Shown: one piece after another, positions 1 to 19,055 of the stretch | How positions within the stretch are numbered: position 1 is the stretch's first letter | How the letters are laid out: each line of letters opens with the position of its first letter | Virus record (IMG/VR): IMGVR_UViG_3300011934_000017 | Location: 156,238-220,237 of that record | Reading direction: 5' to 3' (one strand) | DNA: 64,000 nucleotides | Position numbers and translations under genes: made by a program | The notes under the pieces: generated by a model | What the model was told of the DNA's origin: nothing | Database searches by the model: none | What the model saw: the letters and a program-made list of their open reading frames with translations, nothing else

Positions 1-377
1 AGAAAGTTTTGGACATTGTTCACATACTGAGGAACAGTAGGGAGCTTAGCTACCTGTAAAAACGCTCTCACATGTTGAGGCTCAATAGGCACATCGACGC
101 CAACAGTACCCTTGTCACTCCATACGACTTTTTGAAAACGTTTCCAGATAACGTCTCGGAAGAATTGATGTACCATAGCTTGAAAGCGTTTATCTTTGGC
201 CACCAAGCTGTATGTACGTCCTATAAAGTCGAGCACATCAGGCGCTTGCTTGGGCTTTATGGTGCCGTTTCTAAGATCGAGGAGGGTATCTTTATCTTTT
301 GCGGAGGAACACTCTGCAATAAAGTCAAGGGAGCCGTCAATATTGTTGCTCGCCTGAATTGTTCTAGTTTTAGCCAT
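1..377 (-). CDS. Hypothetical protein, truncated at window edge (MAKTRTIQASNNIDGSLDF...)
   Basis: Manual translation: ATG at 377, frame open to the left edge, starts 7 nt after the stop of the acidic gene. Not in the ORF track. Confidence 0.75.
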   Translation of the reverse strand, partial: MAKTRTIQASNNIDGSLDFIAECSSAKDKDTLLDLRNGTIKPKQAPDVLDFIGRTYSLVAKDKRFQAMVHQFFRDVIWKRFQKVVWSDKGTVGVDVPIEPQHVRAFLQVAKLPTVPQYVNNVQNF

Positions 378-384
378 GCTAAGT

Positions 385-888
385 TCAATCTGCATCTTCT
401 TCTCCTTCGTCTTCTGAGTCTTCTTCTAGGTCTGCATCCTCGTCTTCCTCTTCTCCTAGGTCTGCATCCTCGTCAGCATCTTCGTCTGGCTCGTCATCAT
501 CTGCATCGTCATCTGACTCGCCATCATCGTCCCCATCATTGGCATCGCCGCCATCAGCATCATCGGCATCATCGTCGGCATCATCATCACCAGCATCGTC
601 ATCACCTTTTTCTTTGGAATCATCGTCATCAAGATCAAGACCTTTAGTAAGATCGTCACCTTCTTCTTCGGGCTTCTCTTCACCATCTTTCTTTTCTTCA
701 CCTTTTTCTTTTTGCTCTTTCTTAGCTTCTTCTTTCTTCTGCTCTCGGTCTTCTTTCTTTTCTTCTGCCTCTTCTTCTTCGGAAGGCTCAGTTTGAATAG
801 CCGTTCCAGGATCGGTAGGTCCATAAGAAGCTAACACTTCGCGCATGGAGTTTTCATCAAATGATATGGAAATAAACATGTTCTTCAC
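385..888 (-). CDS. Highly acidic low-complexity protein (about 50% D+E)
   Basis: 83 D/E of 167 aa by count; start GTG 888 or ATG 879 (AGGTG upstream); lies between co-oriented genes. Confidence 0.85.
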   Translation of the reverse strand: MKNMFISISFDENSMREVLASYGPTDPGTAIQTEPSEEEEAEEKKEDREQKKEEAKKEQKEKGEEKKDGEEKPEEEGDDLTKGLDLDDDDSKEKGDDDAGDDDADDDADDADGGDANDGDDDGESDDDADDDEPDEDADEDADLGEEEDEDADLEEDSEDEGEEDAD

Positions 889-891
889 CTG

Positions 892-1929
892 CTATTCGAT
901 ATTTATGGCTGAAATAAGCTCTTGCTTATCTTCCTCGTCGGAAGGGTGTTCAGACATAAAATCTTTGAGTGTTTTTCGGAGTTTCTTATCGTTAAAGCAG
1001 ACACCTAACATAGGACATTCCTTATAGTAGGCAATCTCTTTCTCATAAAACGCCAACGTCTTGCAAGGTTTATGCTTTATTGCCTTATCTGGATTTTGTT
1101 GTTTGAAGCTTTCTACTCCAGCCTTAAACTTCAATCTTTCGTTCTTTATGAGCGCCGCGCATTCTTCGTCCCACTTGTCTGTCCAGGTTTCTGAGTATTC
1201 GAAGAAATTAAACGGGTTGTCGCGGCTAAAATAAATCAGACTAAATCCTGCAATATCCATGTTGTACTTCTTCTTCAGAACCCAACAGTATGTAGGAAGC
1301 TGCTTTAAGTGACCTCTCTGAGGAAGCTTACCGCTGTCCATTTTATTCTTGGTGGTAGTCTTATAATCCGCTACCCAGTATCTTCCATCTTGCATCTTTA
1401 TGATACAGTCAATATGACCCTTTAAACCGCGGTAATTGATTTCTTTCTCAACGTACTCCATACCGCTTTTGCATATAGGGCACTTATTATTTGTACTATT
1501 CTTCCGTGTGAGCTTTCCTTTACGCACTATTTGACCGTGTTTGTCGTAAAGATCGAGTCCTCTGGCACCTTTTTTGCATTTATGATTAATGCACTTCCAG
1601 TCACCAAAAATCTTTCCAGAAAAACCCATGTGAAATTGAATGTTCTCGTGGGCTTTTGTGCCTATAGAGGTGAAGTAGTCCCCTGAGGCGGAACACTCGC
1701 TCTCGAAATAACCTATAGAGGCTCCTTTTGTAAGCTTCATGAAAACTAATATGCTACACAAAGGAAAAGCAGAGGGTCTATACTCAGGTCTTCTTCCTTC
1801 TTTTGTAGAGTATACGTTTTCCATAGCGTTCTCGTAGAGCTTGCCCGCTATAGATGTGGCTTTTGATCGTCTCGGAGGAAAACCACCTTTGGTAAACGTT
1901 TTCTTCTTAGGGATACGTGAATTAAACAC
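892..1929 (-). CDS. Cas4/RecB-like PD-(D/E)XK exonuclease with Cys cluster and inserted zinc ribbon
   Basis: RPSAFPLC, GTKAHE, GHID...DYKT, QLPTY, C-terminal PC...CPMLGVC; extra CxxxxC...CPIC; GAGG RBS before GTG. Confidence 0.8.
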   Translation of the reverse strand: MFNSRIPKKKTFTKGGFPPRRSKATSIAGKLYENAMENVYSTKEGRRPEYRPSAFPLCSILVFMKLTKGASIGYFESECSASGDYFTSIGTKAHENIQFHMGFSGKIFGDWKCINHKCKKGARGLDLYDKHGQIVRKGKLTRKNSTNNKCPICKSGMEYVEKEINYRGLKGHIDCIIKMQDGRYWVADYKTTTKNKMDSGKLPQRGHLKQLPTYCWVLKKKYNMDIAGFSLIYFSRDNPFNFFEYSETWTDKWDEECAALIKNERLKFKAGVESFKQQNPDKAIKHKPCKTLAFYEKEIAYYKECPMLGVCFNDKKLRKTLKDFMSEHPSDEEDKQELISAINIE

Positions 1930-1941
1930 AAGTGAATCCTC

Positions 1942-1991
1942 GTGTAAATATAGTCATTATTTACACATAAATGTAAATAGCATCTATATAA
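1942..1991. promoter_or_regulatory. Divergent promoter region with three TGTAAATA copies
   Basis: GTGTAAATA-N7-TATTTACAC perfect inverted repeat at 1942-1966, plus TGTAAATA 1972-1979 followed by TATATAA, between divergent nuclease and primase genes. Confidence 0.7.
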
Positions 1992-2012
1992 ATTACAGCT
2001 TGGGATGTTTGC

Positions 2013-2993
2013 ATGAGCGATGCCCGTCAAATAATATTCGATGAAATAACGTCCAAGATAGGTGGTAGCAAAAAGCTGGCTGGCGACACCTATATGATAT
2101 GTTGCCCTTACCACAGCGACAGCACACCGTCTGGAGGTATCAACCTGGCGGTAGAGTCGAACATACCACTAGGCTACTATCACTGCTTTGGTTGTGGAGA
2201 GAAACGTCATTGGAACTCATTGGCTGAGACGCTAGGTCTTCACCAGTTCAAAGATTGGGAATTGTCTTTCAAAGGAAATGGAGGCACAGAAAAGAGAAAA
2301 TCAAAGACGGTAACCTATGAGACACATAAACAAGAATTGCGTCGGTCACTCAACACGTATGAAAGCATCGACTGGCCTGCGAATATGTCATGGCGAGGCT
2401 ATAACGGTACCCTACTGCGTAAGCTTGGTGGCGTCTTTTATAATGATCCGATGACAGATCAAGTAATGCTGTTCTTTCCTGTGTACATAAATAAAAAGTA
2501 CAAAGGTGGCGTAAGAGCTTACCTAGAAAAACAAACAAACGGCCTTAGCTATCTGACAACGAAAGGAGAGTGGGTAAAAGACTACGGTCTTCTTGGTTAC
2601 GAGTACATAAAACGTATTATGCGAAAGCGACAGTATACTGCGGTCGTGCTTGTTGAAGGACCAAGAGATATGCTTCGACTGATAGACAACAAGATACCTG
2701 CATTGGCTGTACTAGGTTCCGAAAACTTCTCAGAGAAAAAGCTTTTACGTGTGCTGGCGCTTAATTCTTATATAGAAACAATATACGTGATGCCAGATAA
2801 CGATAAAGCAGGAACCAAGATGTACTCAATCGTTAAACGAGTAGCCAAAGATATGGTAAAAGTGAAAAGACTGAAGCTGCCTCGTGAGAAAGACATGGAA
2901 GGCAATCTGATTAAAATGGATCCAGATGATGCACCGATCGGTCTTATTCAGCAAGTGAAAAAGATTATAGAAGCAAGCCGAAAAGCCGCGTAA
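2013..2993 (+). CDS. dnaG: DnaG-type DNA primase (zinc finger + TOPRIM)
   Basis: CPYH...CFGC zinc finger, VLVEGPRD and PDNDKAG TOPRIM motifs. Confidence 0.9.
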   Translation: MSDARQIIFDEITSKIGGSKKLAGDTYMICCPYHSDSTPSGGINLAVESNIPLGYYHCFGCGEKRHWNSLAETLGLHQFKDWELSFKGNGGTEKRKSKTVTYETHKQELRRSLNTYESIDWPANMSWRGYNGTLLRKLGGVFYNDPMTDQVMLFFPVYINKKYKGGVRAYLEKQTNGLSYLTTKGEWVKDYGLLGYEYIKRIMRKRQYTAVVLVEGPRDMLRLIDNKIPALAVLGSENFSEKKLLRVLALNSYIETIYVMPDNDKAGTKMYSIVKRVAKDMVKVKRLKLPREKDMEGNLIKMDPDDAPIGLIQQVKKIIEASRKAA

Positions 2994-3009
2994 TAAAAAC
3001 ACACAGTTC

Positions 3010-3049
3010 AGACACAAAAAAGGCCGCATTTGCGGCCTTTTTTGTGTCT
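3010..3049. terminator. Bidirectional rho-independent terminator
   Basis: Perfect 19-bp inverted repeat AGACACAAAAAAGGCCGCA-TT-TGCGGCCTTTTTTGTGTCT between convergent genes. Confidence 0.9.
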
Positions 3050-3069
3050 ATGGTAAATGCTTAGAAGAT

Positions 3070-3672
3070 TTATTCGTCTTCCATTACATCCATAGCTTCG
3101 ACACACCATGCTTTCAGCTCGGCACTGGATGTGTTATCCATGAGGTACTGGACGTCTTTTGCGTTCATTGTATCAAGCTTAGTCTCAAGCTCTACAATCA
3201 AGTCCTCAACGCCTTCTTCTGAAGCGCGTAGCAGAATGTTTTGTACAAACTGGCTAACGTCATCTTTGGCTTTCGGAGGCTCTGCGTTAACGCTTTCTTC
3301 GACAGGTGCTTGGAAGCTCAGGTCGTTGTCTTCTTGCAGAACGTCGAAGATGCGGTCGTATTCTTTCTGGGCACGAGGATCTTGTAGAAATTCCTCTGCG
3401 CTTTCGCTGCTAACGATATGTACGAAACCGCGAGCAACCAAACGACGGAAGTTAGGGTTGCGAAGAACGTCTTCTTTGGTAGCAAAGGTAGATAGATCGA
3501 CCGGAATGAAAGTAACCGGTACCTGTACAGAAATTTTCTGTTGACCAGAATCTACCACAACAAAGTTTACGTTGCCGCGCGGATTGCTTTTGTTCAGCAC
3601 GTAAATTTGTGAAGAGTCAGACTTTTCAGCCTGTGCTACGTTTTGACGATCCATTTTTACTTTAATAGGCAT
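3070..3672 (-). CDS. Hypothetical protein
   Basis: Long ORF; ATG 3672 preceded by GAGGAG, preferred over TTG 3690. Confidence 0.8.
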   Translation of the reverse strand: MPIKVKMDRQNVAQAEKSDSSQIYVLNKSNPRGNVNFVVVDSGQQKISVQVPVTFIPVDLSTFATKEDVLRNPNFRRLVARGFVHIVSSESAEEFLQDPRAQKEYDRIFDVLQEDNDLSFQAPVEESVNAEPPKAKDDVSQFVQNILLRASEEGVEDLIVELETKLDTMNAKDVQYLMDNTSSAELKAWCVEAMDVMEDE

Positions 3673-6090: not shown

Positions 6091-7505
6091 GAAGAAAGAA
6101 TTACATTGTCACCGTAAAAAGAAATGTCGTCAAAGAAGACGTGCTGGATGAATTACAGCGCCCAGAATGCGGATGCGTCCATCGAAGCGTCGAAGTAACC
6201 GACTTCCAATCGTTGAGCAGAAGGAATTTCACAGTAGCTTTGACTGTGGAAGAGCGGGATATCCTGAGAGAAAGCGACAATGTGGTTGATGTTGTTTTGG
6301 AAGAAGGCTTCAATAGAATGAAGCCTGTGCTTGAAGAGCAACTGATTAATCCTGCTTTTGAGAATAGCGCTTCAAGCACCCACGACAACTGGGCTCTGGA
6401 TCATTGTGCGTTTCGAAACGGATACAAGTACATTTACTCGCACACCGGAAAGAACGTAGACATAATCTTCATTGACTCAGGTGTGGACCCTAATCACTCT
6501 GAGTTCGAACAGAACGGTGTATCCAGAGTCCGCGTTATTGAATGGGAAGCTGGACAGTTCAGCACTAAGCCAGATCAATACGTAGACACGGAGGGTCATG
6601 GGACTGGTGTGTCTAGCTGTGGTGTAGGCAAAAGACAAGGCTTCGCAAAAGACAGTGACATATATAGCATAAAGATTTTTGATAATGATGCCTACAGCCC
6701 GTTAAAAGCGTTGCAGCTTGCGCGTACTTGGCACAATCAAAAGACGAACGGTCGTCCTACCATAGTGAACAATAGCTGGGGATATTCAGCGGAGTATCCA
6801 CCTGGGCATCCTAAAGCAGGACAAAAGCATCCTGTTCAAGTAGCTGTGATAGATGCTGAAATCGAATCCATGATAGACGCGGGCATTATAGTAGTAAGCG
6901 CAGCAGGAAATGAAAATCACCACGTAGCCGCAGAAGGCACTGCCGAATACGATGATTTTTACTACACAGACAGCAGCGGTAACTACACCGAAATTATGGA
7001 GGATGCTGCATACTTTGATAGGAACAATCGATACACGCCGGGCGGTTCTGCCGAGACGATATGCGTTGGTTCAATAGGTGAGTTCTATCCTACTTCCAGA
7101 TTCATAAGGTCATGGTTTTCTAATTTTGGAAGTAGGGTAGACATATTTGCTCCAGGACGTGTGATTCAGTGTGCTCAGTCCTTAACAACAAACGATCTAA
7201 AGAAAACCAATGGTACTTCTTTTTCTTCCGGCATTCTGAGCGGTATAATTGCGCTTTGGTTAGAGATAAACCCGACTGCGAATCAAATGGATGTTAGAAA
7301 ATGGCTGAGTAGGCATGCCTTTTCAAGCGAGGTCGTAGGCAGTTTAGAAGGTGCAGAAAATCAAACAGCCAGAGTATTGTTCAACGGTGTCAGAGCAGCT
7401 AAAGACACTCCTCATACAATACTGTTGAAGCAAGGTAATCAATGGTATCCAGTACAACATATAACCAGCAATAAACGAGCCGTATATGGCAGGAGAATTT
7501 CATGA
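6015..7505 (+). CDS. Subtilisin-family (S8) serine protease with I9-like prodomain
   Basis: Triad motifs FIDSGV, EGHGTGV, NGTSFS; oxyanion AAGNE; NNSWG, FSNFGSRVDIFAPG. Start uncertain (76-nt overlap with the upstream gene). Confidence 0.9.
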   Translation: MDSSNSTNPKNRTLERHCEGHEDSVGRKNYIVTVKRNVVKEDVLDELQRPECGCVHRSVEVTDFQSLSRRNFTVALTVEERDILRESDNVVDVVLEEGFNRMKPVLEEQLINPAFENSASSTHDNWALDHCAFRNGYKYIYSHTGKNVDIIFIDSGVDPNHSEFEQNGVSRVRVIEWEAGQFSTKPDQYVDTEGHGTGVSSCGVGKRQGFAKDSDIYSIKIFDNDAYSPLKALQLARTWHNQKTNGRPTIVNNSWGYSAEYPPGHPKAGQKHPVQVAVIDAEIESMIDAGIIVVSAAGNENHHVAAEGTAEYDDFYYTDSSGNYTEIMEDAAYFDRNNRYTPGGSAETICVGSIGEFYPTSRFIRSWFSNFGSRVDIFAPGRVIQCAQSLTTNDLKKTNGTSFSSGILSGIIALWLEINPTANQMDVRKWLSRHAFSSEVVGSLEGAENQTARVLFNGVRAAKDTPHTILLKQGNQWYPVQHITSNKRAVYGRRIS

Positions 7506-8119
7506 ACGACAAGAGCCTAGAAATTTCAAAGAACATGGTAGTATTAGCACGTCGTCGCAAAGGTAAAGGAAAGAAGCGTGGTTCAGCGCGTAGCCAGATG
7601 CTAAAGATGGTCATGCCTATGCTTTCCCGTGAACATGGAGAGAAACTAGCAGAAGCTATCGAACACAATAACGTAAGTCTGCTACGCCGCACATGGGATT
7701 CAATTAAACATGATCTATCGGAAAAGCTGGCGAATGAAGCTACTGCCAGCGACTTTGCTTCTGAAGTCCAAGAAATCTTTGATAAAGTCTTTAAAGACCT
7801 TGAAGAAGAGTTTCTTTCACAATCAGCGTCTAAGAACAGAGGACGTTTGTTAACAGGCACCGCGCGTATTCCCTCTTTGACTCGTGATCTAATTGCAGAT
7901 GGTTATGTTGAATTTACCGATGCAAAAAATAACGTCTATACTGTGACTATCACGCAGCTTGGTGTTAAGAAAGTTGGAAATCCTCAACCAATAATCTATG
8001 CAGGCGCTTTAATTACCTCTGATTCCGGAATGAAAGAAGGTATATCTGCTTCTGGAATTTATGCTGACGTTTGTTCGGAGATTATTATTTCTGCTATGTC
8101 GCTGTCAGAAAACGATTAA
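7502..8119 (+). CDS. Hypothetical protein
   Basis: ATGA overlap with the protease stop; followed by a terminator. Confidence 0.8.
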   Translation: MNDKSLEISKNMVVLARRRKGKGKKRGSARSQMLKMVMPMLSREHGEKLAEAIEHNNVSLLRRTWDSIKHDLSEKLANEATASDFASEVQEIFDKVFKDLEEEFLSQSASKNRGRLLTGTARIPSLTRDLIADGYVEFTDAKNNVYTVTITQLGVKKVGNPQPIIYAGALITSDSGMKEGISASGIYADVCSEIIISAMSLSEND

Positions 8120-8135
8120 ACCTACCGAAACCTCT

Positions 8136-8163
8136 AAAAAGGGCGGCAAATGCTGCCTTTTTT
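8136..8163 (+). terminator. Rho-independent terminator
   Basis: AAGGGCGGCA-AA-TGCTGCCTTT stem followed by T run. Confidence 0.8.
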
Positions 8164-9130
8164 CGTGTCTGAAGCGTGACGCTGAAACATCAAATGTAAC
8201 AGAGTGTTAACCATGCAAAAGCACTCTACAGGGCTGTTTGAAAGCATTGGGGGCGTCATCCATGCAAAACCAATGCTTTTGCATGTCTGTAAGCAAAATA
8301 CCTTGTTACAATTCGTTACAAAAAAGTTTTGTGTGGAAGAAATGCGTTTTTAGACCGTTTGGAGCCTCTGTCCTGTTAAAAAACGTCAAAATATCAACCT
8401 TGTTTTTTAGACGCCTTAAAATCAGGCTAAAAATCACTCATTTTTAACGATTTCCTCAAAACCAAAAAGTGTCAATACGCAGTATTGGCGCAGATTGCGT
8501 TGAGCAGCAAAGCGTGAAGAGCTAAGCGAGGCGCAGCCGAGCATTAGCGATGATGCTTGAGTAATGCCTCAGCAAACAAGAGACGCTAGGCGGCGCGAAC
8601 ACTTAGAGCCCGTCTCGTCCAGAAGCGTTGAGCGCAGCGAATAAGCGAAGGGGTTCCAAGCGAAGCGTTAAGCGTTCCAAGCGCTGCGAGGCAGCGCGAT
8701 AGCAACGAGCGTAGCGAGTTGCTTAAAAGAACCTATCCTACGCGATCCTACGACTGATTCATTTAAAGAACGTTAAGCAATTAAAAATTGCATTCTTTTG
8801 GATCATGTTAAAACAGGCCGAACTCTGTCTTTGCTAAGACCATAGCAGACCTTAAAACAAGGTGAATTAATAGGACGTGTGGAATTAAATGAGCCAGTCG
8901 TAGGACTGCGTAGTGTTGTATAATGTTAAAGGTCCAACTCGCTACGCTCGTCGTCCCTAACGCTGCTTCGCAGCGTTTCTCTAATCCTTTCCGCTTCGCG
9001 GTACCGCGGGCTAACGCCCGCTCTCGCTCACTTCGTTCGCTCACCTTAAAAAACCTAATTTGTCAGTTCAAAAATCAAAGTCTTTTCAAGACAAACTTTT
9101 TAAATGAAAAACTTTTGTTGCGCGCTTTAA
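8164..9130. other. Non-coding dyad-symmetric region; candidate replication origin
   Basis: Largest gene-free gap; 17-bp perfect IR 8705-8721/8935-8951, nested 15/17 IR 8738-8754/8897-8913, AT-rich core, strand-specific hairpins, flanking A/T tracts. Confidence 0.55.
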
Positions 9131-9131
9131 G

Positions 9132-9139
9132 TGTAAATA
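9132..9139 (+). promoter_or_regulatory. TGTAAATA promoter motif upstream of the modification operon
   Basis: Exact motif copy ending 34 nt before ATG 9173. Confidence 0.65.
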
Positions 9140-9172
9140 TTGAACAGATTATATGGAAAACCGGAGATTACG

Positions 9173-10648
9173 ATGGGAAAACAGTTACCCGAAGAGCTAA
9201 GGTATCAGCTTCTTGTTTTCGACTATAAGAAAGCTAACAAGGCACGCAAGCTCTGGAAAAAACGTAAAGGAGATAAGGATAAAGAAGCCCATAAAAAGTT
9301 TTGCTATGGATTAGGAGCAAAGCTAGACGTTTCTCCGAAAGTAGTTAGCTTCATCGTCAAAAACAATAAATGGGCAGATCAAAAGCCCGCAGAGCATGTA
9401 AAATCATTACCAACAGGCCTTCAAGAATACGATAAACCTTCTTTGAAGCCTGAAGCCTTAGTCAGAGGAAGAGAATTATACATATCTCCTAAAAACTGGC
9501 GCAGGCTCAACGAGCATTACACCAAAGGAAAAATAAAGAAAGCTATTGTTCGCGCTGTTAGAAAGCTAGATTTACCTGCACCTGTTCAACCTATAAGCCA
9601 AGAGCAAGCAGATGATAGCTTTCGAGCACTGAAAAAGTTGCGTTCTGACAGCATGATAAAACGTATGCCTACCTGCACACGGTGGGATTATAAATACGGT
9701 ATTTCCGACGTTGTTATTGACGCACCTCGAACAGGAAACGAATGCTCAAACTTTTATCATCAGGAGTCACGTTGGTGGTGCGACTATCAGAGTATTCCGT
9801 CACCGATGAAAGTATGGAATTCTGATCTTCACATGTATTCCATGATGAATGCTTTATGGACGTTGAAGTTTAAGAAGATTACAGGACCAGAGCTTCGCAC
9901 AGCTATAAGTGTCCGTAAATATGTGGCTAGTCAGTTTAAACCTTCTGCCGCCAAAGCGTTTTACGAGCTATTTGACTGCAAGCACGTTTACGATCCTTCC
10001 AGTGGCTGGGGAGACCGTCTAGCAGGCTTCATGGCAGCTAAATGCACCAAGTCCTATTGCTCTACGGATCCCAACAGCAGACTGTACGACGACTATGAAT
10101 TGCAGAAAAATCGGTACGGTGGAAAGAAAGAAATAAACATGTACTGTCACGGTAGTGAAATCAAAGGTGGTGTTCGCAAGATGTACGGACACAGAGTTGA
10201 TACTGTCTTTACTTCGCCTCCTTATTTCAATGCCGAACGCTACAGCGAAGACGAAGGCCAAAGCTTTAGGCAGTTTGATGAAATAAGTGCGTGGCGTGAA
10301 AATTTCCTGTTTCCTTCTTTGAAAAATGCGTGGAATGCTTTGACTTCAGAAGGTGAACGCGGTGGCATTCTAGCAATCAATATTTCGGACATATACAACT
10401 CTTCGGATAAAACTCGCGGTGAGATATGCGACCCTATGAACGATTACATATCTTCGCTGAAAGGTGCTCGATACATCGGTTGTATTGGTTTGCGTCTAGC
10501 TAAACGTCCTGAGAGCGGTGCACTTGAAGGTAAACAAGGTGCAAGTATCGAACCTATCTGGGTCTGGGCTAAAGGTGGCTCTTGGGAGCTAGACGATTAT
10601 ATAGATAACGGATTTAAGACTAAGAAAGTAAAAGGTCTTTGGGGATAA
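9173..10648 (+). CDS. SAM-dependent amino (N4-C/N6-A type) DNA methyltransferase
   Basis: Motif I YDPSSGWGDR and motif IV FTSPPYF; long basic N-terminal extension; GGAG RBS before ATG 9173. Confidence 0.85.
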   Translation: MGKQLPEELRYQLLVFDYKKANKARKLWKKRKGDKDKEAHKKFCYGLGAKLDVSPKVVSFIVKNNKWADQKPAEHVKSLPTGLQEYDKPSLKPEALVRGRELYISPKNWRRLNEHYTKGKIKKAIVRAVRKLDLPAPVQPISQEQADDSFRALKKLRSDSMIKRMPTCTRWDYKYGISDVVIDAPRTGNECSNFYHQESRWWCDYQSIPSPMKVWNSDLHMYSMMNALWTLKFKKITGPELRTAISVRKYVASQFKPSAAKAFYELFDCKHVYDPSSGWGDRLAGFMAAKCTKSYCSTDPNSRLYDDYELQKNRYGGKKEINMYCHGSEIKGGVRKMYGHRVDTVFTSPPYFNAERYSEDEGQSFRQFDEISAWRENFLFPSLKNAWNALTSEGERGGILAINISDIYNSSDKTRGEICDPMNDYISSLKGARYIGCIGLRLAKRPESGALEGKQGASIEPIWVWAKGGSWELDDYIDNGFKTKKVKGLWG

Positions 10649-10649
10649 T

Positions 10650-11360
10650 ATGGCACATATCATTGAAGCAAACAGTATCGACAGTCTTTGGTATCGTACT
10701 ATGAATACCTTACTGACTGAAGGCGATAAGATTAGCGGTATTCAAGAAATTCCTAATCTGATCTTGGTTCTTAAAAAGAATTTTCGATCCTCTGAGTTTT
10801 TCGATAAAGAGTTTCGTCGTATTTTTGGAGACGAACGAATAGACTTTGCATCTTCTGTAACGTTTGTTCCTCCGAAAGAAGGCATGGTAAGTCCTTCATA
10901 CGAACAGAATGAGCCCAAAGCTAAGTGGACGAAAACTTACTGGGGTCGTATGATCAGTTTTGACGGAAGTGTTAATCAGATTGAGGAAGCAATCAAAAAG
11001 CTTTCTAAAGGTAAGAATACCAAGATGATTTCTATAGGTATTTATGCGCCTTCTTCCGATCATCGCAAAGTCATGGGTGGTGTGCCTTGTATGACTGCTA
11101 TCGATATAAAGCCTAGAAATGGAAAGATTGATCTATCTGTTTTCATGAGGTCTATGCGATTCTCTAAGTCGGGTTATGGAGACGTTCATGCCTTGTGTGA
11201 ACTAGGTAAATATATCTGTGAGCGCTCTAACATGGAAATGAACAGCCTCACCATGTTTGCGACCTCTGGACACACTTTTTACTCTGGTGAAGAGTTTACA
11301 AACTGTAAAGCTCTTATGGAATCAATGAAAGAACGCAAAGCAGAGAAGGTAAGAATATGA
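10650..11360 (+). CDS. Atypical thymidylate-synthase-fold protein (dCMP-hydroxymethylase-like Asp)
   Basis: YWGR...NQ, PC147, RS167-168, D178 at the E. coli N177 position, H208; R170 replaces the conserved D169. Confidence 0.8.
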   Translation: MAHIIEANSIDSLWYRTMNTLLTEGDKISGIQEIPNLILVLKKNFRSSEFFDKEFRRIFGDERIDFASSVTFVPPKEGMVSPSYEQNEPKAKWTKTYWGRMISFDGSVNQIEEAIKKLSKGKNTKMISIGIYAPSSDHRKVMGGVPCMTAIDIKPRNGKIDLSVFMRSMRFSKSGYGDVHALCELGKYICERSNMEMNSLTMFATSGHTFYSGEEFTNCKALMESMKERKAEKVRI

Positions 11361-12172
11361 AGCTCAGCCTTAATAATCCAGTTGAAACCCATCGTATTGG
11401 CAAATACGAAGTCTTTGTCAAGCGTGATGATATGATGGGTGATAATAAAATTCTTCCACCTTGGGGAAAGATGGACGCCATTGATAGTATTCTTCAAAGA
11501 ATGGATCTTAGCGTACCTCTTATACAACTGAATGTCTTTGGTTCTTGGAGTGGTTGGGCACTCGCACGTCTCGCTAAAAAGTATGATTGCGAAGTACATG
11601 TGGTTCATCCTAAGACGAAGAAAATCACTGACGACTATATAGGTGTGATGGAAGAAGCAGGTGCTATCATTCATCCTATTCGACATAATATGATGCGCGT
11701 TTTGTACGCTCAGACGAACAACAGGGCGAAAGAAGAAGGTATGAGAATGCTGCCGTATGCATTCAACACACCGAAATATCTAAACGCTATGGCAAGACGT
11801 TTACGCGCTACTTTAGAAGAGCTGGGTCCCATAGATAACTTGGTGGTAAGCTCTGGTAGTGGTGTGACTGTTACGGGACTGTCTAAACCTTTTCTTGATC
11901 TAAATCCTAAAGGTCAAGTCTACACTGTTTGCGTTTCGTCCGAAAATTCGATTCGTAAAACGTTTAACAGTCGTGAAGTCAGCACTGATCCTGTTCACAT
12001 TATCAAGTCACCGTATGAGTTTGGTGATACGATGCCTAAAGTTGAAGTTCCTTTCTCTTGTAATCAGTTTTGGGATAAGAAAGCTTGGCATTGGTTGACG
12101 GAGAACAAGAGCATTCTTAAAGGTAAGCGTACACTGTTCTGGAATCTAGGTGGTGAGTATACATTTTTGTGA
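11357..12172 (+). CDS. PLP-dependent fold-type II enzyme (ACC deaminase/D-cysteine desulfhydrase-like)
   Basis: VKRDD, PPWGK (putative PLP Lys), SSGSGVT phosphate loop, LFWNLGG; ATGA overlap with the upstream gene. Confidence 0.85.
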   Translation: MKLSLNNPVETHRIGKYEVFVKRDDMMGDNKILPPWGKMDAIDSILQRMDLSVPLIQLNVFGSWSGWALARLAKKYDCEVHVVHPKTKKITDDYIGVMEEAGAIIHPIRHNMMRVLYAQTNNRAKEEGMRMLPYAFNTPKYLNAMARRLRATLEELGPIDNLVVSSGSGVTVTGLSKPFLDLNPKGQVYTVCVSSENSIRKTFNSREVSTDPVHIIKSPYEFGDTMPKVEVPFSCNQFWDKKAWHWLTENKSILKGKRTLFWNLGGEYTFL

Positions 12173-12183
12173 GGATTGAATAA

Positions 12184-13026
12184 ATGGGCAAGCCGAAAGT
12201 TAAAGAATGTTTGATACGTAACCTGGAAAGATATGACGGACCTTTTGCTGTTCTTCTGTCGGGTGGTGCAGACAGTCACGCTAATCTTTTCGCATTACTT
12301 GAGATGGGCGCAGACGTACACGTATATAGCTGCACCTTAGAAGACAGGGAAAGCAGGGATTTTATTTGTGCTCGCAGGACTGCTGAAATCTTTGATCTAC
12401 CTTTCACACCTGTTATTTTACCTACAGACCTCGACCAGCTCCTTGTAGATATTCGAGAGAACATGAGTCTTATCGGAACAAAAGGCAAGGTAGAGGTAGA
12501 AGCTTTATGGGCGTTTCGTAAAGCCGTTGATATTATAACAGAACCTAGTATCGTCAGCGGTCTGTCAGCAGGTATGTATTTTTGTTTGACCAAGAAAGGC
12601 AGCATACACTACGCACATACAGGAAGAATCGACGAATATCGTAGAGAGACATTTAAAAGAGCCTCTAATCCTAATAATCAAGGGGCCAAGATGAAACGAT
12701 ATTCGAAAAGCGTTGGAAAGAAGTGGATAAATCCTTGGATAACCCGAGGAATGCTAAAGACGTTCTTAGGAACTACATGGGAAGATGTAAATAAACCACG
12801 ACAAAAAGAAGCGATCCGCGCAGACTTTGAAAAATACTTTGCAAAAACCAAAGTGTTTAATCAACGAGACATGCACAAAGGTGATAGCGGTATGTCTGAG
12901 CTATTCGCTAAATTGTTGGAAGACCCTAAGGTAAATGTTAGGAATCATAAATCTGTTGTTGGTATCTACAATATGATACGAGCAGAAGAGCTGGCCAGAG
13001 TAAATAAAGGCCCTGGCTTGTTCTAG
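12184..13026 (+). CDS. Asparagine-synthetase-like PP-loop amide ligase without glutaminase domain
   Basis: LLSGGADS PP-loop, IVSGLSAGMYF, INPW, KEAIR, KGDSG; 280 aa with no N-terminal Ntn domain. Confidence 0.75.
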   Translation: MGKPKVKECLIRNLERYDGPFAVLLSGGADSHANLFALLEMGADVHVYSCTLEDRESRDFICARRTAEIFDLPFTPVILPTDLDQLLVDIRENMSLIGTKGKVEVEALWAFRKAVDIITEPSIVSGLSAGMYFCLTKKGSIHYAHTGRIDEYRRETFKRASNPNNQGAKMKRYSKSVGKKWINPWITRGMLKTFLGTTWEDVNKPRQKEAIRADFEKYFAKTKVFNQRDMHKGDSGMSELFAKLLEDPKVNVRNHKSVVGIYNMIRAEELARVNKGPGLF

Positions 13027-14815: not shown

Positions 14816-15529
14816 ATGAACCTAACTAAAATCATGGAAAACAATTCAAGGCTGTTCTCTCACGTTATAATCCCTAGACGAAGCGCTCCTACAAAAATTC
14901 GTCCCATTTTACCTCTCAAGATTAAGTTTCTAACAAAACCTAATTCTAAGCAAATCCTTTATTCTGGTTTGTACTTTTGCATTCCAGATAATCTTCTGTT
15001 TTACGAAATGGACTTACTAGAAAAGGCAATTATAAGCAGGTTGCCTGACATTTCTCAACCTTTGAACATACCGTATAGTCTGGTTACGAAACTAGATCCG
15101 TCATTTTATGGATACATAAATGGATTTCACGTCGAAGACAATAAGGCTTATATAGAATCTGCGAATTGTCTTTTTGTTAATCCTGACTCACCTTTATTAC
15201 CTACGTCGCTCGAAGACCCTGCTTATGGTGTACTGCTTCCCCTTTATGAGGCGTCTGCTTGCTTATCTTATCTGTTAGCTTCCATATCCCTATATAGAGC
15301 TGGTGACTTTGATACTCTACCTACGATGCTAGAGAAGACTTGGAGTAAAGTAGAAAAAGCTTCAGGTGTAAATATGACTAAAGCATCTTTCATCGACGGT
15401 ATGTTTAGAATCGGTCCTGACTTATTTGGTAACTCTATAGAAGATGATTGTGTGGCTCCCGGACTTGCGCATCTTCTAGGTAGCTTTTTGTCTTTAGATA
15501 CTGACGTGTCGAAACATTTGGAGTGGTAA
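14816..15529 (+). CDS. Hypothetical protein
   Basis: ATG 14816 downstream of TGTAAATA (14773-14780). Confidence 0.7.
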   Translation: MNLTKIMENNSRLFSHVIIPRRSAPTKIRPILPLKIKFLTKPNSKQILYSGLYFCIPDNLLFYEMDLLEKAIISRLPDISQPLNIPYSLVTKLDPSFYGYINGFHVEDNKAYIESANCLFVNPDSPLLPTSLEDPAYGVLLPLYEASACLSYLLASISLYRAGDFDTLPTMLEKTWSKVEKASGVNMTKASFIDGMFRIGPDLFGNSIEDDCVAPGLAHLLGSFLSLDTDVSKHLEW

Positions 15530-15531
15530 TC

Positions 15532-16677
15532 ATGGCTAAGAAAGCAAAAGCAGCACCAATTGAGACAACTACTAGCGGTGCACTGGCTGTAAAATACAGA
15601 CCTGCAAAACTGAAAGACTTGTCTGGTCAACCACATATCACTACTCAGCTAAAAGGCATGTTCAAGTCTCGAAAAGTACCTGGCGCTTTTTTGATTGAAG
15701 GTCAAACAGGCGGCGGTAAGACGACTCTAGCGCGTATCATTCATAGGTACTTGAACTGCGAGAAAGGTACGGCTTGCGGTAAATGTGAGTCATGCCGTAT
15801 TGACCCTAAGAACCATCCTGATCTTGTTGCTATAAACGCAGGTACTGATGGTAAAGTAGACGACATTCGAAAGCTTGTCAAAGGTGCGCGTGTTGCTCCT
15901 TACCACAACAAACGTATTATCCTGATCGACGAGGCACATAAGCTAACAGGTGCTGCGGCAGAAGCTTTGCTGGTACCTTTGGAAGAACCAAGTCGTGATA
16001 CCATCTGGATTTTGTGTACAACGAATCCTGAAAAGATGCTACCTACGATGATCAATCGTTGTGTGCATTTCACAATGAAGCCAGTCGAGCACCAAGATAT
16101 CGTTAGTCGCCTTACTTTCATTGCAGAGAAAGAGAAAGTAGATTTAAGCGGGGAAGACGGTCAAGAAGCTTTGAGCCTGATCGCTGACTTTTCCAACGGC
16201 AGTATGCGTCATGCTGTAGCGCTTCTGGAGTCTGTGCTTTATGCTGTCGCTGGCGGTGCAGATATCAGTAACAAAGAGGTACTGTCGGCGTTTATTCAAA
16301 ACTCCGAAGTTGATTTAGACAAGGCTGCCGTCAGTCTAGTCGCTGCACTAATGAATAATGATCTTAAAGGTGCTATTCGCTTTGTACGTAAAGCAGGTAA
16401 CACACGCGGTCTTGTAAGCAAGTCACGTTGGTTAATTGACTACTGTATAGGCGCTAAGACTAAGACAGCCAAGTTCAAGCCGTACTCCGGTCGATTGTTT
16501 GAGAAGCTGGTCTCCGACAAAGGTATTGACGTTCGATTGGATGCTTTGCTGTTGCTTCAGATGACCATTGTCGATGCTGAAATGAAGATGAATAGCACGT
16601 CCATCGATGAATCCGTTATTCTCCAAACAGCTATCGCCAAATACGCCTTCGATAATGTTGAGGAAGAGGAAGAGTAA
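15532..16677 (+). CDS. dnaX: Clamp loader ATPase, DNA polymerase III gamma/tau-like
   Basis: AVKYRP, Walker A GQTGGGKTT, Zn module CEKGTACGKCESC, Walker B LIDEAH, LEEP, NRC. Confidence 0.9.
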   Translation: MAKKAKAAPIETTTSGALAVKYRPAKLKDLSGQPHITTQLKGMFKSRKVPGAFLIEGQTGGGKTTLARIIHRYLNCEKGTACGKCESCRIDPKNHPDLVAINAGTDGKVDDIRKLVKGARVAPYHNKRIILIDEAHKLTGAAAEALLVPLEEPSRDTIWILCTTNPEKMLPTMINRCVHFTMKPVEHQDIVSRLTFIAEKEKVDLSGEDGQEALSLIADFSNGSMRHAVALLESVLYAVAGGADISNKEVLSAFIQNSEVDLDKAAVSLVAALMNNDLKGAIRFVRKAGNTRGLVSKSRWLIDYCIGAKTKTAKFKPYSGRLFEKLVSDKGIDVRLDALLLLQMTIVDAEMKMNSTSIDESVILQTAIAKYAFDNVEEEEE

Positions 16678-19055
16678 TGATAGAAGTCGATTCCTTTATT
16701 CTCCGAAATATCGTCTACTTCAACGAAGCCAAAGTTCCTGTACGTAAGAATAATGGTTTCGTTATCATTTCTGGTCTAAACAAAGACAGTCGTATTGCAG
16801 AAGATCAAAACAACGGTGCAGGTAAGTCATTGCTTTGGTCGGCGTTTCCTAACGCATTGTACGCGGCTGCTCCTTCTAGCACAGCTAAGAACACAAAGAA
16901 GGACATGCTGGACAGTTCTAAGTCTGAGATTGAAATACGTTTTAAGAACAACAGGCAGCAGAAGGTAAAGGTAGTTCAAAAGCCTTCTAAGTGGCTAGTG
17001 TACGAAGAAGAACCTGATGGTTCCCTGAAAGATATCAAGTCACACCGCGTATCTAATCAGCAAGAAAAAATAGCAGAACACTTTCCTCTTTCACAGGACG
17101 AGTTCTATGCTTACACATACCTATCCAGTATTCAAGGCCAGCGCCTGCACTTTCAAGTAGAAAAGCCTGCTGAACGCCTTAAGTTTATCACTTCTATTTT
17201 TCAGTTAGATGCTTATGACAAGCTGAAGAAATATTTTACCAACATGCTTGGTAGAATCAAGGATGAACAGACTAGGTTCTCCGTTCTTGAGTCGAAGCTT
17301 TTAAACGCTAACGTCCAGCTTGAAAGAATCCAATGGACTGAAGAATCAGTAGAGAAAGCCAAGAGAGCCAAGGAAAGCTTTGCTGATCTAAAAGTGAGGC
17401 GTGATAGTATAGCAAGAAGCGTTTCTAAAGGTGAGACACGAGTAGGTCAAATAAAGTCTTTGGTTCGTCTGCTAGAAAAGAAAGAAGCGTTAGGTATTCC
17501 AGAAGATACCGATGTTGACGATATGAAAGCCAAGCTTTGTGTACGGATGAAAATCATTCGAGACTATGAAGCTTACCTCAAGGAGCTAAAATCGTACCAA
17601 AAGCGTGTGTCTAAAATCGAAGAGGCTTTGGAAGAACTCAACACCAAAGACTTGACCGATAAAAAGACGTTGAACAAAAAGCTTCCTAAGCTTCACAGTA
17701 AAGCAGAAGATTTGGTTGCTGATATTGAAAGGGCGCGGGAAAGCGAACGTAAAAGAAGCAGGCTTGCCGATAAAGTAAAAGAGTGCCGTAAAGAACTCAA
17801 AAGCTTAGGCTTCTCCTCTGCTGATGACGTTGATACAGATACCGATTTGGACGATGATATTTCTATCTGTCGTACCACACTCCAGTTAAAGAAGCTTTTA
17901 GACTCCAGCTCCGACTCTACTTGTCCTACCTGTATGCAGTCAGTAGACCTGAAGTCCATCAAGACCAGTGTTAAGAAAGCAGAAAAGCGTCTGAAGAAAC
18001 TGGAGACATTGAACAAGGCACGGCGTGTTCTTACCGAGCTGCAAGACTTTGAAACAGAGCTAGAGTCTGTGGAGAAAGTTGATTCTGTCGATAGTCTAAA
18101 AGAAACATTGAATGATACCAAATCGAAAATTCAAGCTGCCGAGAAAGAACTCAAATTGCACGGTCGCTTGCAAGAATTAAAAGAACAGCTTGCGGAAGAG
18201 GAAGAACCTAAGGCACCTAAAAAGACGCCACCTAAAAACGCCTCCATAGATGACATAGATGAAAAGCTGGCGCTGTTGAATGAGTTTGCCAAGATCGACC
18301 ATTCTATCGAAGTGTTGATCGACGGTAGTAGCTTTTTGCTAAAGGCTTCCAAGAGTCCTGAGAAAGCATTGTCTAAGACCAAGATACAGTTAGATGATCT
18401 TTCGGCACAACTGGCTAAGCTTGATGCCGCCTATAAGATGGTGTCTAAACTTGTTAGTGAGTACGACCTGCGTCTCGGCGAATACAGGGTTCTTTCAAAA
18501 CAGAAGATTGAGCTGGAAGCCGAGTTAGAAGAGATTAAACCTATTCTTGAAAAGAGGGACCTGTACAAAGCACTAGAAAAAGCGTATAGCGCAAAAGGCT
18601 TGAAAGTATCTAAGGCTAATGAGATTGTACGTCTATTGGAAGCCAACCTGAATCGTTACTCTAATCTGATCTTTGCAGAACCATTTACGTTCAAAGTATA
18701 CGCGACTGAGCAAGGTGTCTTTTGCGACGTAGACCGAAACTCTGGTAAAGATTCTGATGTGCGCCTGCTTTCCGGCTCCGAGTCTGATAGTTTCCGTCTG
18801 CTGTTTATGCTAAGTCTATTACTTATGGTTCCGTCAGATCGCCGTACAAACTTCGTGGTGTTAGATGAACCTGAGTCACACATGGATCCCAGAACGCGCA
18901 ATCTGTTTGCAGAGCGTTACATTCCTTTTCTACGCGAAGTAGTTCCACACCTATTCTTGATTACTCCACAAGACCATCATATCTATAGTGACTTTGATCA
19001 TTGGACTGTCGAGAAAGCTAACGGTGTTTCTACTCTCAAAATCAATTCACTGTAA
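16677..19055 (+). CDS. sbcC: SbcC/Rad50-like SMC ATPase
   Basis: NNGAGKS, coiled coils with central CPTC hook, LSGSES signature, LDEPESHMD. Confidence 0.9.
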   Translation: MIEVDSFILRNIVYFNEAKVPVRKNNGFVIISGLNKDSRIAEDQNNGAGKSLLWSAFPNALYAAAPSSTAKNTKKDMLDSSKSEIEIRFKNNRQQKVKVVQKPSKWLVYEEEPDGSLKDIKSHRVSNQQEKIAEHFPLSQDEFYAYTYLSSIQGQRLHFQVEKPAERLKFITSIFQLDAYDKLKKYFTNMLGRIKDEQTRFSVLESKLLNANVQLERIQWTEESVEKAKRAKESFADLKVRRDSIARSVSKGETRVGQIKSLVRLLEKKEALGIPEDTDVDDMKAKLCVRMKIIRDYEAYLKELKSYQKRVSKIEEALEELNTKDLTDKKTLNKKLPKLHSKAEDLVADIERARESERKRSRLADKVKECRKELKSLGFSSADDVDTDTDLDDDISICRTTLQLKKLLDSSSDSTCPTCMQSVDLKSIKTSVKKAEKRLKKLETLNKARRVLTELQDFETELESVEKVDSVDSLKETLNDTKSKIQAAEKELKLHGRLQELKEQLAEEEEPKAPKKTPPKNASIDDIDEKLALLNEFAKIDHSIEVLIDGSSFLLKASKSPEKALSKTKIQLDDLSAQLAKLDAAYKMVSKLVSEYDLRLGEYRVLSKQKIELEAELEEIKPILEKRDLYKALEKAYSAKGLKVSKANEIVRLLEANLNRYSNLIFAEPFTFKVYATEQGVFCDVDRNSGKDSDVRLLSGSESDSFRLLFMLSLLLMVPSDRRTNFVVLDEPESHMDPRTRNLFAERYIPFLREVVPHLFLITPQDHHIYSDFDHWTVEKANGVSTLKINSL

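What the first reader, a model, noticed from the sequence alone, without database searches (positions are those of the whole stretch)
8991..9045. Minus-strand segment resembles the ColE1/pBR322 primosome assembly site
Seen on the - strand: GGTGAGCGAACGAAGTGAGCGAGAGCGGG...GCGAAGCGG, with GTGAGCG twice (9044-9038, 9031-9025) and AAGCGG (8996-8991). From memory, the pBR322 L-strand n'-pas reads ...GAGCGCAGCGAGTCAGTGAGCGAGGAAGCGG..., and GTGAGCG/AAGCGG were implicated in PriA recognition; GAGCGCAGCGA also occurs here at 8630 on +. Inference: the phage may recruit host PriA or use a convergent ssi-type signal.
Basis: partly seen in the sequence, partly recalled or inferred. Interest (0 to 1): 0.6.

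Follow-up and report, generated by a model that had tools for sequence, protein, structure and literature searches.

The report
Conserved hairpin-rich noncoding element, jumbo phage
The flagged words are real, but their likeness to the ColE1 primosome site is no better than chance; they form one end of a 600-base, single-copy noncoding element conserved in PaBG-like jumbo phages, which is most likely a replication start region or a structured RNA.

Summary
Aligned to ColE1 itself, the segment does pick out the recalled pas region, but the score (14) is reached by 79 of 200 shuffles and 85 of 200 random phage pieces. Homology to the PriA site is therefore not supported.

The segment is the outer right arm of a 415-bp imperfect palindrome (8629-9043). 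This lies in a 1-kb gene-free gap of a 220-kb PaBG/Lu11-type jumbo phage from a stromatolite metagenome. The element occurs once per genome. It follows the same 205-aa gene in three closer relatives at sequence level, and a compositionally similar element follows it in PaBG, Lu11, HRDY3 and two other contigs.

Its left half is better conserved than the neighbouring gene and holds a hairpin with compensatory changes. It carries ten GCG-N(1-2)-AGC "mini-hairpin" words, the genome maximum: five on the top strand left of centre and five on the bottom strand right of centre. A phage-promoter-like box points into it, and a DnaG-type primase gene lies 5.5 kb upstream.

Best reading (0.4): a replication initiation zone with opposed single-strand hairpin signals, like RSF1010 oriV or G4. 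Main rival (0.3): a structured noncoding RNA. Neither could be tested directly.

The parts
8142..8164 (+). Intrinsic terminator-like hairpin plus T run ending the upstream gene block (gene 7502-8119)
   Evidence: Sequence read; the terminator scan flags the same hairpin on the - strand.
8261..8285 (.). Perfect 9-bp inverted repeat CATGCAAAA-N7-TTTTGCATG in the spacer before the element
   Evidence: Read directly; not studied further.
8305..8320 (+). Two direct GTTACA repeats 10 nt apart (iteron-like). The box TGTTACA-N-GTTACAAAAAAG is conserved in L017 and L037 (ATTACA in the second repeat of L036); L020 has only TTGTTACAATT.
8455..8476 (+). Conserved 22-nt box at the left edge, identical in L017. 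It is a one-base variant (TGTCAATA) of the phage promoter word TGTAAATA and points into the element.
   Evidence: TGTAAATA occurs 34 times in the genome, mostly before genes. A canonical TGTAAA box sits at the same edge in L020, Lu11 (annotated there as a middle/late promoter), HRDY3 and L041.
8473..8487 (+). Hairpin H1: CAATAC-GCA-GTATTG
   Evidence: Kept in the three sequences that cover it (L036 is cut there), with one compensatory change, AU to GC.
8476..8627 (+). Left domain outside the palindrome: AGCG-rich, purine-rich, with local hairpins
   Evidence: The left domain (8455-8735) is 79-86% identical to L037, against 64-69% for the neighbouring gene's DNA. nhmmer E values run from 1e-58 to 1e-81 in relatives, with no second significant copy in the genome.
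8582..8619 (+). Hairpin H3: 12 pairs, none broken in 4 phages, three positions with compensatory double changes
   Evidence: alignment A6, columns 136-173. The non-Watson-Crick cells are G-U only.
8629..8766 (+). Left arm of the long imperfect palindrome. It contains GAGCGCAGCGA at 8630 and mini-hairpin words at 8632, 8660, 8696 and 8709; a fifth lies at 8531.
8767..8884 (.). AT-richer centre (the 8736-8934 stretch is 38% GC), with the conserved box CTCTGTCTT (8823-8831) and the small hairpin GTCTT-TGCT-AAGAC (8827-8840)
   Evidence: The 9-mer is identical in L037, L017 and L020.
8885..9043 (-). Mini-hairpin words lie on the - strand at 8941-8947, 8965-8971, 8993-8999, 9010-9017 and 9020-9027. 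The end 9019-9045 is conserved in L017 and L037.
9132..9139 (+). Phage promoter word TGTAAATA for the next gene (9173-10648), which marks the right limit of the noncoding region

Best explanation
The segment is the outer right arm of a single-copy, 600-bp cis-acting element conserved in PaBG/Lu11-type jumbo phages. I read it as a replication initiation zone. Transcription from the promoter-like box at its left edge, or an initiator bound to the nearby GTTACA repeats, would open the region. The purine-rich strand on each side (top strand on the left, bottom strand on the right) would then fold into stable hairpins, including GCG-N(1-2)-AGC mini-hairpins. These would keep the bubble or R-loop open and serve as outward-facing single-strand initiation signals for the phage's own DnaG-type primase and helicase. 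Shown here: the anatomy, conservation, single copy, motif enrichment and polarity, covarying hairpins and genomic context. Inferred only: opening, priming, and the proteins involved.
For: The palindrome spans 8629-9043. Its DNA fold gives z -5.4, and the RNA fold gives about z -10 on both strands. Contigs from two runs cross it unchanged, so it is not an assembly artefact. The element follows homologues of gene 7502-8119 in L036, L037 and L017. Analogous AGCG-rich elements follow it in L020, PaBG, Lu11, HRDY3 and L041. It is present once in the 220-kb genome, and its left domain is better conserved than the adjacent gene. GCG-N(1-2)-AGC words number 10 per 600 nt, against a genome mean of 0.64 and a next-best window of 5. 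A mononucleotide shuffle gives a mean of 0.58 and a maximum of 5. In the window all left-side copies are on + and all right-side copies on -. The element is also the top-scoring stretch in every relative's locus. AGCG-to-AGCG spacing peaks at 5 and 6 nt. At aligned positions the loop letters vary while GCG and AGC stay fixed. This motif family is reported at the G4, St-1 and alpha3 primase origins and at RSF1010 ssiA (PMC13037366). RSF1010 oriV uses two oppositely oriented hairpin signals on complementary strands (PMC8567376). For context, a DnaG-type primase gene lies 5.5 kb upstream and a clamp loader 6.5 kb downstream. The genome-wide cumulative GC-skew minimum lies about 7 kb to the left, at the point where transcription diverges. 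The motif polarity persists in relatives whose arms pair poorly (PaBG, L041, L037), which suggests each strand's words are selected rather than the long-range pairing.
Against: There is no functional data of any kind. The GC-skew minimum is about 7 kb away and coincides with the switch in gene direction, so it is weak evidence. The motif polarity is confounded with purine skew and, in the window, with the palindrome itself. Lu11 and HRDY3 have almost no motifs on the bottom strand of their right halves. No initiator protein was identified, and the fold of the adjacent 205-aa protein gave no clear match. A promoter-like box pointing inward, covarying hairpins with G-U rather than A-C cells, and a strongly conserved 5' domain fit an RNA gene equally well. 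The element is absent at this place in the Erwinia Y3-like phages and in NCTB.
Confidence: 0.4

Rival explanations
1. The element is a gene for a structured noncoding RNA of about 570 nt, transcribed rightwards from the promoter-like box at 8455-8476. It would have a 5' domain of local hairpins and a long closing helix between 8629-8650 and 9019-9045. The RNA itself, perhaps bound by the adjacent 205-aa protein, would carry the function.
For: A promoter-like box of the phage's own type sits at the left edge in the relatives that carry an element. Hairpin H3 has three compensatory positions and no broken pair in four phages; its only non-Watson-Crick cells are G-U. The 13-nt H3 loop is identical in L037 and L017. 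The 5' domain is better conserved than the neighbouring gene. The outermost long-range helix is kept with two compensatory pairs. L020 has a terminator-like hairpin with a T run just after the conserved centre box. The C-terminal domain of the neighbouring protein weakly resembles dsRNA-binding domains at Z 5.6.
Against: No Rfam family matches, even at E up to 5. Whole-element folding is significant only in the window, with no consistent strand preference. Arm mismatches show no excess of G:T over A:C: 13 against 12 in the window, and A:C is more frequent in Lu11, L017 and HRDY3. About half of the long-range pairs break in one of three phages, and the covariation term is unfavourable. The window clade shows no clear terminator. 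The box overlaps hairpin H1. No RNA runs exist for this phage.
Confidence: 0.3
2. The element is an array of double-strand binding sites for a phage protein and acts in something other than initiation: a packaging (pac) site, a centromere or condensation site, a recombination site, or a transcriptional insulator between two operons.
For: Short words are repeated in two opposed arrays around a conserved centre, which resembles the layout I recall for the P1 pac site (from memory). A small conserved gene of unknown function always lies next to the element. The element sits between a terminator and the next promoter.
Against: In PaBG the large terminase is gene 108, far from the gp159/gp160 gap (PMC7412058). 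This record has 3,172-bp terminal repeats about 55 kb away. Covarying hairpins are not expected for a purely duplex binding site. No recombinase or partition gene was seen nearby.
Confidence: 0.17
3. The segment is a true relative or functional equivalent of the ColE1/pBR322 PriA-dependent primosome assembly site, and the phage recruits host PriA.
For: That stretch also contains a GCG-N-AGC word. PriA is reported to recognise hairpin-forming pas sites (PMC11707656).
Against: The alignment score is at chance level and the plasmid search found nothing meaningful. The phage has its own primase, and the host is unknown.
Confidence: 0.05
4. The element is a decaying or selfish palindromic insert, such as a MITE-like element or a PeSL-type mobile cassette, with no function for the phage.
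For: It has long inverted arms. Its 17-mer arm also occurs three times each in two T4-like phage genomes.
Against: It is single copy. It holds a syntenic position across phages whose DNA polymerases are only about 50-58% identical. Its left half is better conserved than coding DNA. About 12 chance hits are expected for a 17-mer in that collection, and 10 were found.
Confidence: 0.05

Closest known systems
RSF1010/R1162 (IncQ) oriV with ssiA and ssiB
   Same: Both have two hairpin-forming initiation signals on complementary strands in opposite orientation, forming a large inverted repeat next to short direct repeats. A GNA-type mini-hairpin lies in the signal (PMC8567376, PMC13037366).
   Different: There is no sequence similarity. 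The arms here are about 140-160 bp with several hairpins each, not single 40-nt signals. The phage primase is DnaG-type, not RepB'. No RepC-like initiator was found, and function is untested.
Primase-dependent complementary-strand origins of phages G4, St-1 and alpha3
   Same: Both have clusters of stable hairpins containing GCGAAAGC or GCGTTAGC. The window has GCGTTAGC with a 6-bp stem at 9006-9021 on the - strand. Those origins are recognised directly by a DnaG-type primase (PMC13037366).
   Different: Those are ssDNA phages with one signal on one strand. Here a 220-kb dsDNA phage has arrays on both strands, and no homology was shown.
ColE1/pBR322 n'-pas (phiX174-type, PriA-dependent)
   Same: Both have AGCG-rich, hairpin-prone DNA, and they share the 10-mer AGTGAGCGAG and GCG-N-AGC words.
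   Different: The alignment score is no better than shuffles. Nothing here links the phage to PriA.
T4 oriF/oriG and the ColE1 RNA II type of transcript-primed origin (from memory)
   Same: A phage promoter reads into a region where a purine-rich transcript could stay hybridised as an R-loop, displacing a strand that folds.
   Different: The promoter here is only a one-mismatch look-alike in the window clade. No unwinding element or R-loop was demonstrated, and the element is much larger and palindromic.
PeSL mobile regulatory cassettes of T4-type phages (from memory)
   Same: Both are intergenic and combine a promoter-like box with a stem-loop.
   Different: PeSLs are multi-copy and flank shuffled genes. 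This element is single copy and syntenic.

Membership tests
ColE1/pBR322 PriA-dependent primosome assembly site (pas) | Sequence similarity to a known pas beyond chance | tested here: not met
   The local alignment to ColE1 NC_001371 scores 14. This is reached by 79 of 200 shuffles and 85 of 200 random phage pieces. Blastn against the plasmid collection gave only chance-level short matches.
ColE1/pBR322 PriA-dependent primosome assembly site (pas) | Single strand folds into stem-loops | tested here: met
   The DNA fold of 8450-9060 gives -124 kcal/mol, z -5.4. Local hairpins occur at 8960-8978, 8991-9001 and 9006-9021. This feature is generic and not specific to pas.
ColE1/pBR322 PriA-dependent primosome assembly site (pas) | Stimulates PriA ATPase and supports PriA-dependent priming | not testable with these tools
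   This needs biochemistry. The host is unknown (stromatolite metagenome).
Oppositely oriented ssi signals of an oriV (RSF1010 type) | Hairpin signals on complementary strands in inverted orientation | tested here: met
   Five GCG-N(1-2)-AGC words lie on + left of centre and five on - right of centre. The arms span 8629-8766 and 8885-9043.
Oppositely oriented ssi signals of an oriV (RSF1010 type) | Adjacent iterons bound by a cognate initiator | tested here: inconclusive
   GTTACA direct repeats 10 nt apart at 8305-8320 are conserved in relatives, but no initiator was identified.
Oppositely oriented ssi signals of an oriV (RSF1010 type) | Primer synthesis starts at the signals | not testable with these tools
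   This needs an M13 ssi rescue or an in vitro priming assay.
Primase-dependent (G4-type) origin | Mini-hairpin words GCGNAGC or GCGNNAGC clustered at the site | tested here: met
   There are 10 in 600 nt, the genome maximum (mean 0.64, next-best window 5). The cluster is also the top window in each relative's locus.
Primase-dependent (G4-type) origin | A DnaG-type primase is available | tested here: met
   Window 2013-2993 matches Zn_ribbon_DnaG and Toprim_2. That this primase recognises the site is not shown.
Structured noncoding RNA family | Match to a described RNA family | tested here: not met
   Rfam gave no hit at gathering score, and only two chance-level rows at E up to 5.
Structured noncoding RNA family | Conserved structure with covariation | tested here: inconclusive
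   Local hairpins H1 and H3 covary. Long-range pairs are often broken, and whole-element z-scores are weak outside the window. Only 3-4 sequences were available.
Structured noncoding RNA family | A discrete transcript exists | not testable with these tools
   No RNA run holds this phage.
PeSL-type mobile cassette or MITE | Several dispersed copies per genome | tested here: not met
   There is a single copy in G000 by blastn and by nhmmer profiles.

The most novel reading that the evidence does not exclude
The element encodes a previously undescribed large structured RNA (about 570 nt) specific to PaBG/Lu11-type jumbo phages. It would be made from a phage-sigma promoter, with a covarying 5' hairpin domain and a long purine:pyrimidine closing helix, and it would work together with the always-adjacent 205-aa protein of unknown fold.
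Probability: 0.27. Interest if true: 0.7.

Novelty: new variant of a known kind. Interest (0 to 1): 0.5.

Why it matters
I know of no mapped replication origin for PaBG/Lu11-type jumbo phages. The PaBG genome paper does not mention one, and in Lu11 the region is annotated as two small hypothetical ORFs. A single-copy, conserved, hairpin-rich element beside the primase module gives a concrete and testable candidate for where these genomes start replication. If it is instead an RNA gene, it would be a new large phage RNA. The case also shows that a remembered similarity to a textbook site can point to the right kind of DNA (hairpin-prone, AGCG-rich) while being wrong about homology.

Tried and rejected
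- **ColE1 pas homology.** Rejected by alignment against ColE1 with shuffle and random-piece controls and by a plasmid blastn.
- **Known RNA families and tRNAs.** None found.
- **Protein coding.** The minus-strand ORFs over the right arm (78 aa in the window, 92 aa in L037) are not conserved, and L017 has no counterpart.
- **Assembly artefact.** Rejected: contigs from two runs cross the palindrome without change or inversion.
- **Blastn against phages.** Queries with the window element, the Lu11 element and the L017 element found nothing beyond self.
- **nhmmer profiles.** Profiles from the close clade do not reach PaBG, Lu11, HRDY3, L020 or L041. Their relation therefore rests on synteny, composition and shared short boxes, not on demonstrated homology.
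- **L005.** This 61% relative of gene 9173-10648 has a different gene order and no element.
- **Mismatch-type test for the transcribed strand.** G:T against A:C counts were uninformative.
- **Strand-specific folding.** No consistent preference. A first version of that script timed out.
- **Neighbouring 205-aa protein.** No verdict from Pfam, PHROGs, the AlphaFold model (pLDDT 66), Foldseek, VIA-align or the ESM Atlas.
- **Terminase search.** Searches of the genome with Pfam Terminase_6N and Terminase_6C found nothing.
- **Expression.** Could not be tested because no RNA runs exist.

Full report
**1. The observation**

The window is the last 64 kb of a 220,237-bp virus record with 3,172-bp terminal repeats.
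- GTGAGCG on the - strand at 9025-9031 and 9038-9044.
- AAGCGG on the - strand at 8991-8996.
- GAGCGCAGCGA on + at 8630.

GTGAGCG occurs only 18 times on both strands of the whole genome, so the doublet is not chance.

**2. The ColE1 comparison**

I fetched ColE1 (NC_001371) and aligned 8990-9046(-) to both of its strands. Its score of 14 is reached by 79 of 200 shuffles of the query and by 85 of 200 random 57-nt pieces of the phage.

A blastn with 11-base words against 72,556 plasmids gave only chance-level short matches. The likeness is a shared taste for AGCG-type words, not demonstrable homology.

**3. What the segment belongs to**

Positions 8120-9172 contain no credible gene and lie between + strand genes 7502-8119 and 9173-10648.
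- Nested inverted repeats run from 8660/8999 inwards to 8766/8885, including a perfect 17-mer pair.
- A self-versus-reverse-complement alignment runs from 8629 to 9043 with 142 Watson-Crick positions.
- The fold is far better than shuffles: z -5.4 as DNA, and about -10 as RNA on either strand.
- Contigs from two sequencing runs cross it unchanged.
- AGCG density here (13 per 200 nt) is the highest in the genome; the next best is 6.
- The centre region 8736-8934 is 38% GC, and the arms are 55-61% GC.

**4. The phage and its relatives**

The DNA polymerase is 58% identical to that of Pseudomonas phage PaBG, 53% to Lu11 and HRDY3, and 47-48% to NCTB and the Erwinia Y3-like jumbo phages. The source is a stromatolite metagenome.

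The same noncoding element follows homologues of the 205-aa gene 7502-8119 in three closer relatives:
- L036, 72% protein identity. Its contig ends inside the left arm.
- L037, 54% protein identity.
- L017, 44-48% protein identity.

Profiles built from the left, centre and right parts find these relatives at E from 1e-15 to 1e-81, and find no second significant copy in the window's genome.

The left domain (8455-8735) is 79-86% identical to L037. The DNA of the adjacent gene is 64-69% identical.

Conserved islands include:
- the 22-mer at 8455-8476;
- the centre box CTCTGTCTT with a small GTCTT/AAGAC hairpin (8823-8840);

More distant phages carry an AGCG-rich, then pyrimidine-rich, element in the same gap, with the same short boxes. 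These are L020, PaBG (the unannotated 1.5-kb gap between gp159 and gp160), Lu11 (annotated there as ORFs 0129A/B), HRDY3 and L041. Sequence profiles do not reach them. The Erwinia Y3-like loci and NCTB lack it.

**5. Structure**

Two local hairpins of the left domain are supported by comparison of four phages:
- H1 (8473-8487) has one compensatory change.
- H3 (8582-8619) has 12 pairs, none broken, and three positions with double compensatory changes. Its only non-Watson-Crick cells are G-U.

The long-range pairing is less well kept:
- About half of the predicted arm-to-arm pairs break in one of three phages, and the covariation term is slightly unfavourable.
- Whole-element folding is weak or not significant outside the window, with no consistent strand preference.
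- Arm mismatches show no excess of G:T over A:C.

The minus-strand ORFs over the right arm are not conserved.

**6. The repeated word**

The AGCG units are mostly spaced 5 or 6 nt apart (24 and 15 cases), which gives GCG-N-AGC and GCG-NN-AGC.

In the window there are five on the + strand left of centre: 8531, 8632, 8660, 8696 and 8709. There are five on the - strand right of centre: 8941-8947, 8965-8971, 8993-8999, 9010-9017 and 9020-9027.

Ten per 600 nt is the genome maximum. The genome mean is 0.64 and the next-best window has 5. A mononucleotide shuffle gives a mean of 0.58 and a maximum of 5.

The same cluster is the top window in every relative's locus. The same polarity holds in L037, L017, L020, PaBG and L041. 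Lu11 and HRDY3 have almost only top-strand copies, and their right halves are C-tract-rich instead.

At aligned positions the GCG and AGC stay fixed while the loop changes in letter and length: C, AT or TC at one position, and T or CC at another.

Several copies are not mirrored in the other arm yet still obey the polarity. However, the polarity is confounded with purine skew.

A recent review describes this motif family as an extraordinarily stable DNA mini-hairpin. It reports it at the primase start sites of phages G4, St-1 and alpha3, at RSF1010 ssiA, and at N4 early promoters (PMC13037366). RSF1010 oriV uses two oppositely oriented hairpin signals on complementary strands (PMC8567376).

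**7. Transcription and context**

The phage's promoter word TGTAAATA occurs 34 times, mostly just before genes, and one copy at 9132 serves the next gene.

The conserved box at the left edge of the element is a one-base variant, TGTCAATA. L020, Lu11, HRDY3 and L041 have a canonical TGTAAA box at the same edge. Lu11's authors annotated theirs as a middle/late promoter. Transcription probably enters the element from the left, and that transcript would be purine-rich (60% purine over 8470-8735).

Nearby genes:
- a DnaG-type primase at 2013-2993;
- a PD-(D/E)XK nuclease at 892-1929(-);
- a clamp loader at 15523-16677;
- an SbcC-like protein at 16677-19055.

The genome-wide cumulative GC-skew minimum is at window 0-2000, where gene direction diverges. 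That is about 7 kb left of the element.

The PaBG paper mentions no origin. It places the large terminase at gene 108, far from this gap, and describes the genes as two oppositely oriented cascades (PMC7412058).

**8. Interpretation**

Settled points:
- The element is real, single copy, conserved and noncoding.
- It is hairpin-rich on the purine-rich strand of each half.
- It is probably entered by transcription.
- It lies in the replication and recombination gene neighbourhood.

My best reading (0.4) is a replication initiation zone with opposed single-strand initiation signals. It would work like RSF1010 oriV or the G4-type primase origins, possibly opened by an R-loop as I recall for T4 oriF/oriG (from memory).

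The main rival (0.3) is a structured noncoding RNA. That reading explains the inward promoter, the covarying hairpins and the well-conserved 5' domain at least as well. It does not explain why bottom-strand motifs persist where the arms no longer pair.

A duplex protein-binding array (pac site, partition site or insulator) gets 0.17. True PriA pas kinship gets 0.05, and a selfish palindrome gets 0.05.

The neighbouring 205-aa protein gave no usable fold match, so it does not discriminate between these readings.

**9. Novelty**

If it is an origin, it is a new variant of a known kind of signal in a phage group where I know of no mapped origin. If it is an RNA, it is a new family. Decisive tests are possible in PaBG and Lu11 and are listed under next steps.

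Noticed in passing
window 10650-13026: Three adjacent genes resemble thymidylate synthase (a likely pyrimidine hydroxymethylase type), a PLP-dependent enzyme, and an asparagine-synthase/QueC-like ATP-pyrophosphatase. This looks like a DNA base hypermodification cluster. L005 has the same genes in a different order.
   Followed up: partly
window 1943-1979: Three copies of the phage promoter word TGTAAATA (two on +, one on -) are packed into the divergent gap between the nuclease gene (-) and the primase gene (+). This is exactly at the genome-wide cumulative GC-skew minimum, so it is an alternative candidate for the origin region.
   Followed up: partly
L009 7567-7583, L010 7700-7716, L014 5411-5427 (records G001, G002): The 17-mer arm ACGAGCGTAGCGAGTTG, which holds a GCGTAGC word, occurs three times each (0-1 mismatch) in two 155-160-kb phage genomes that look T4-like. 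The copies are dispersed in intergenic regions, one of them upstream of a gp45-like clamp gene. It may be a repeated regulatory or hairpin motif there, and the link to this element may be chance.
   Followed up: partly
L028 4343-4891 (Lu11_0129A, Lu11_0129B): The two small hypothetical ORFs annotated in Lu11 lie on the AGCG-rich noncoding element and are probably not genes.
   Followed up: partly
L036 end (6200-6221): The Logan contig of the closest relative stops inside the left arm, right after the 17-mer. This is consistent with an assembly break at a long inverted repeat in that phage.
   Followed up: no
window 8261-8285 and 9080-9092: A perfect inverted repeat, CATGCAAAA-N7-TTTTGCATG, lies in the spacer before the element. 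A second GTCTT-N-AAGAC palindrome lies after the right arm and repeats the one at the element's centre. These are possible protein-binding sites.
   Followed up: no
L029 3600-4242 joined to L030 end (NCTB record start): At the syntenic place NCTB has an AT-rich gap with three copies of CCCTTCCGGGATAT and a 37-nt A run instead of the AGCG element. The record's start was placed there.
   Followed up: no
genome ends (G000 1-3172 and 217066-220237): The record carries a 3,172-bp exact direct terminal repeat, which is long for an assembly overlap. PaBG is described as circularly permuted, so the packaging mode of this relative may differ.
   Followed up: no
L028 4810-4870 and L031 3800-3860: In Lu11 and HRDY3 the right half of the element has runs of C on the top strand, giving four or more G-tracts on the bottom strand. 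That strand could form G-quadruplexes instead of mini-hairpins.
   Followed up: no
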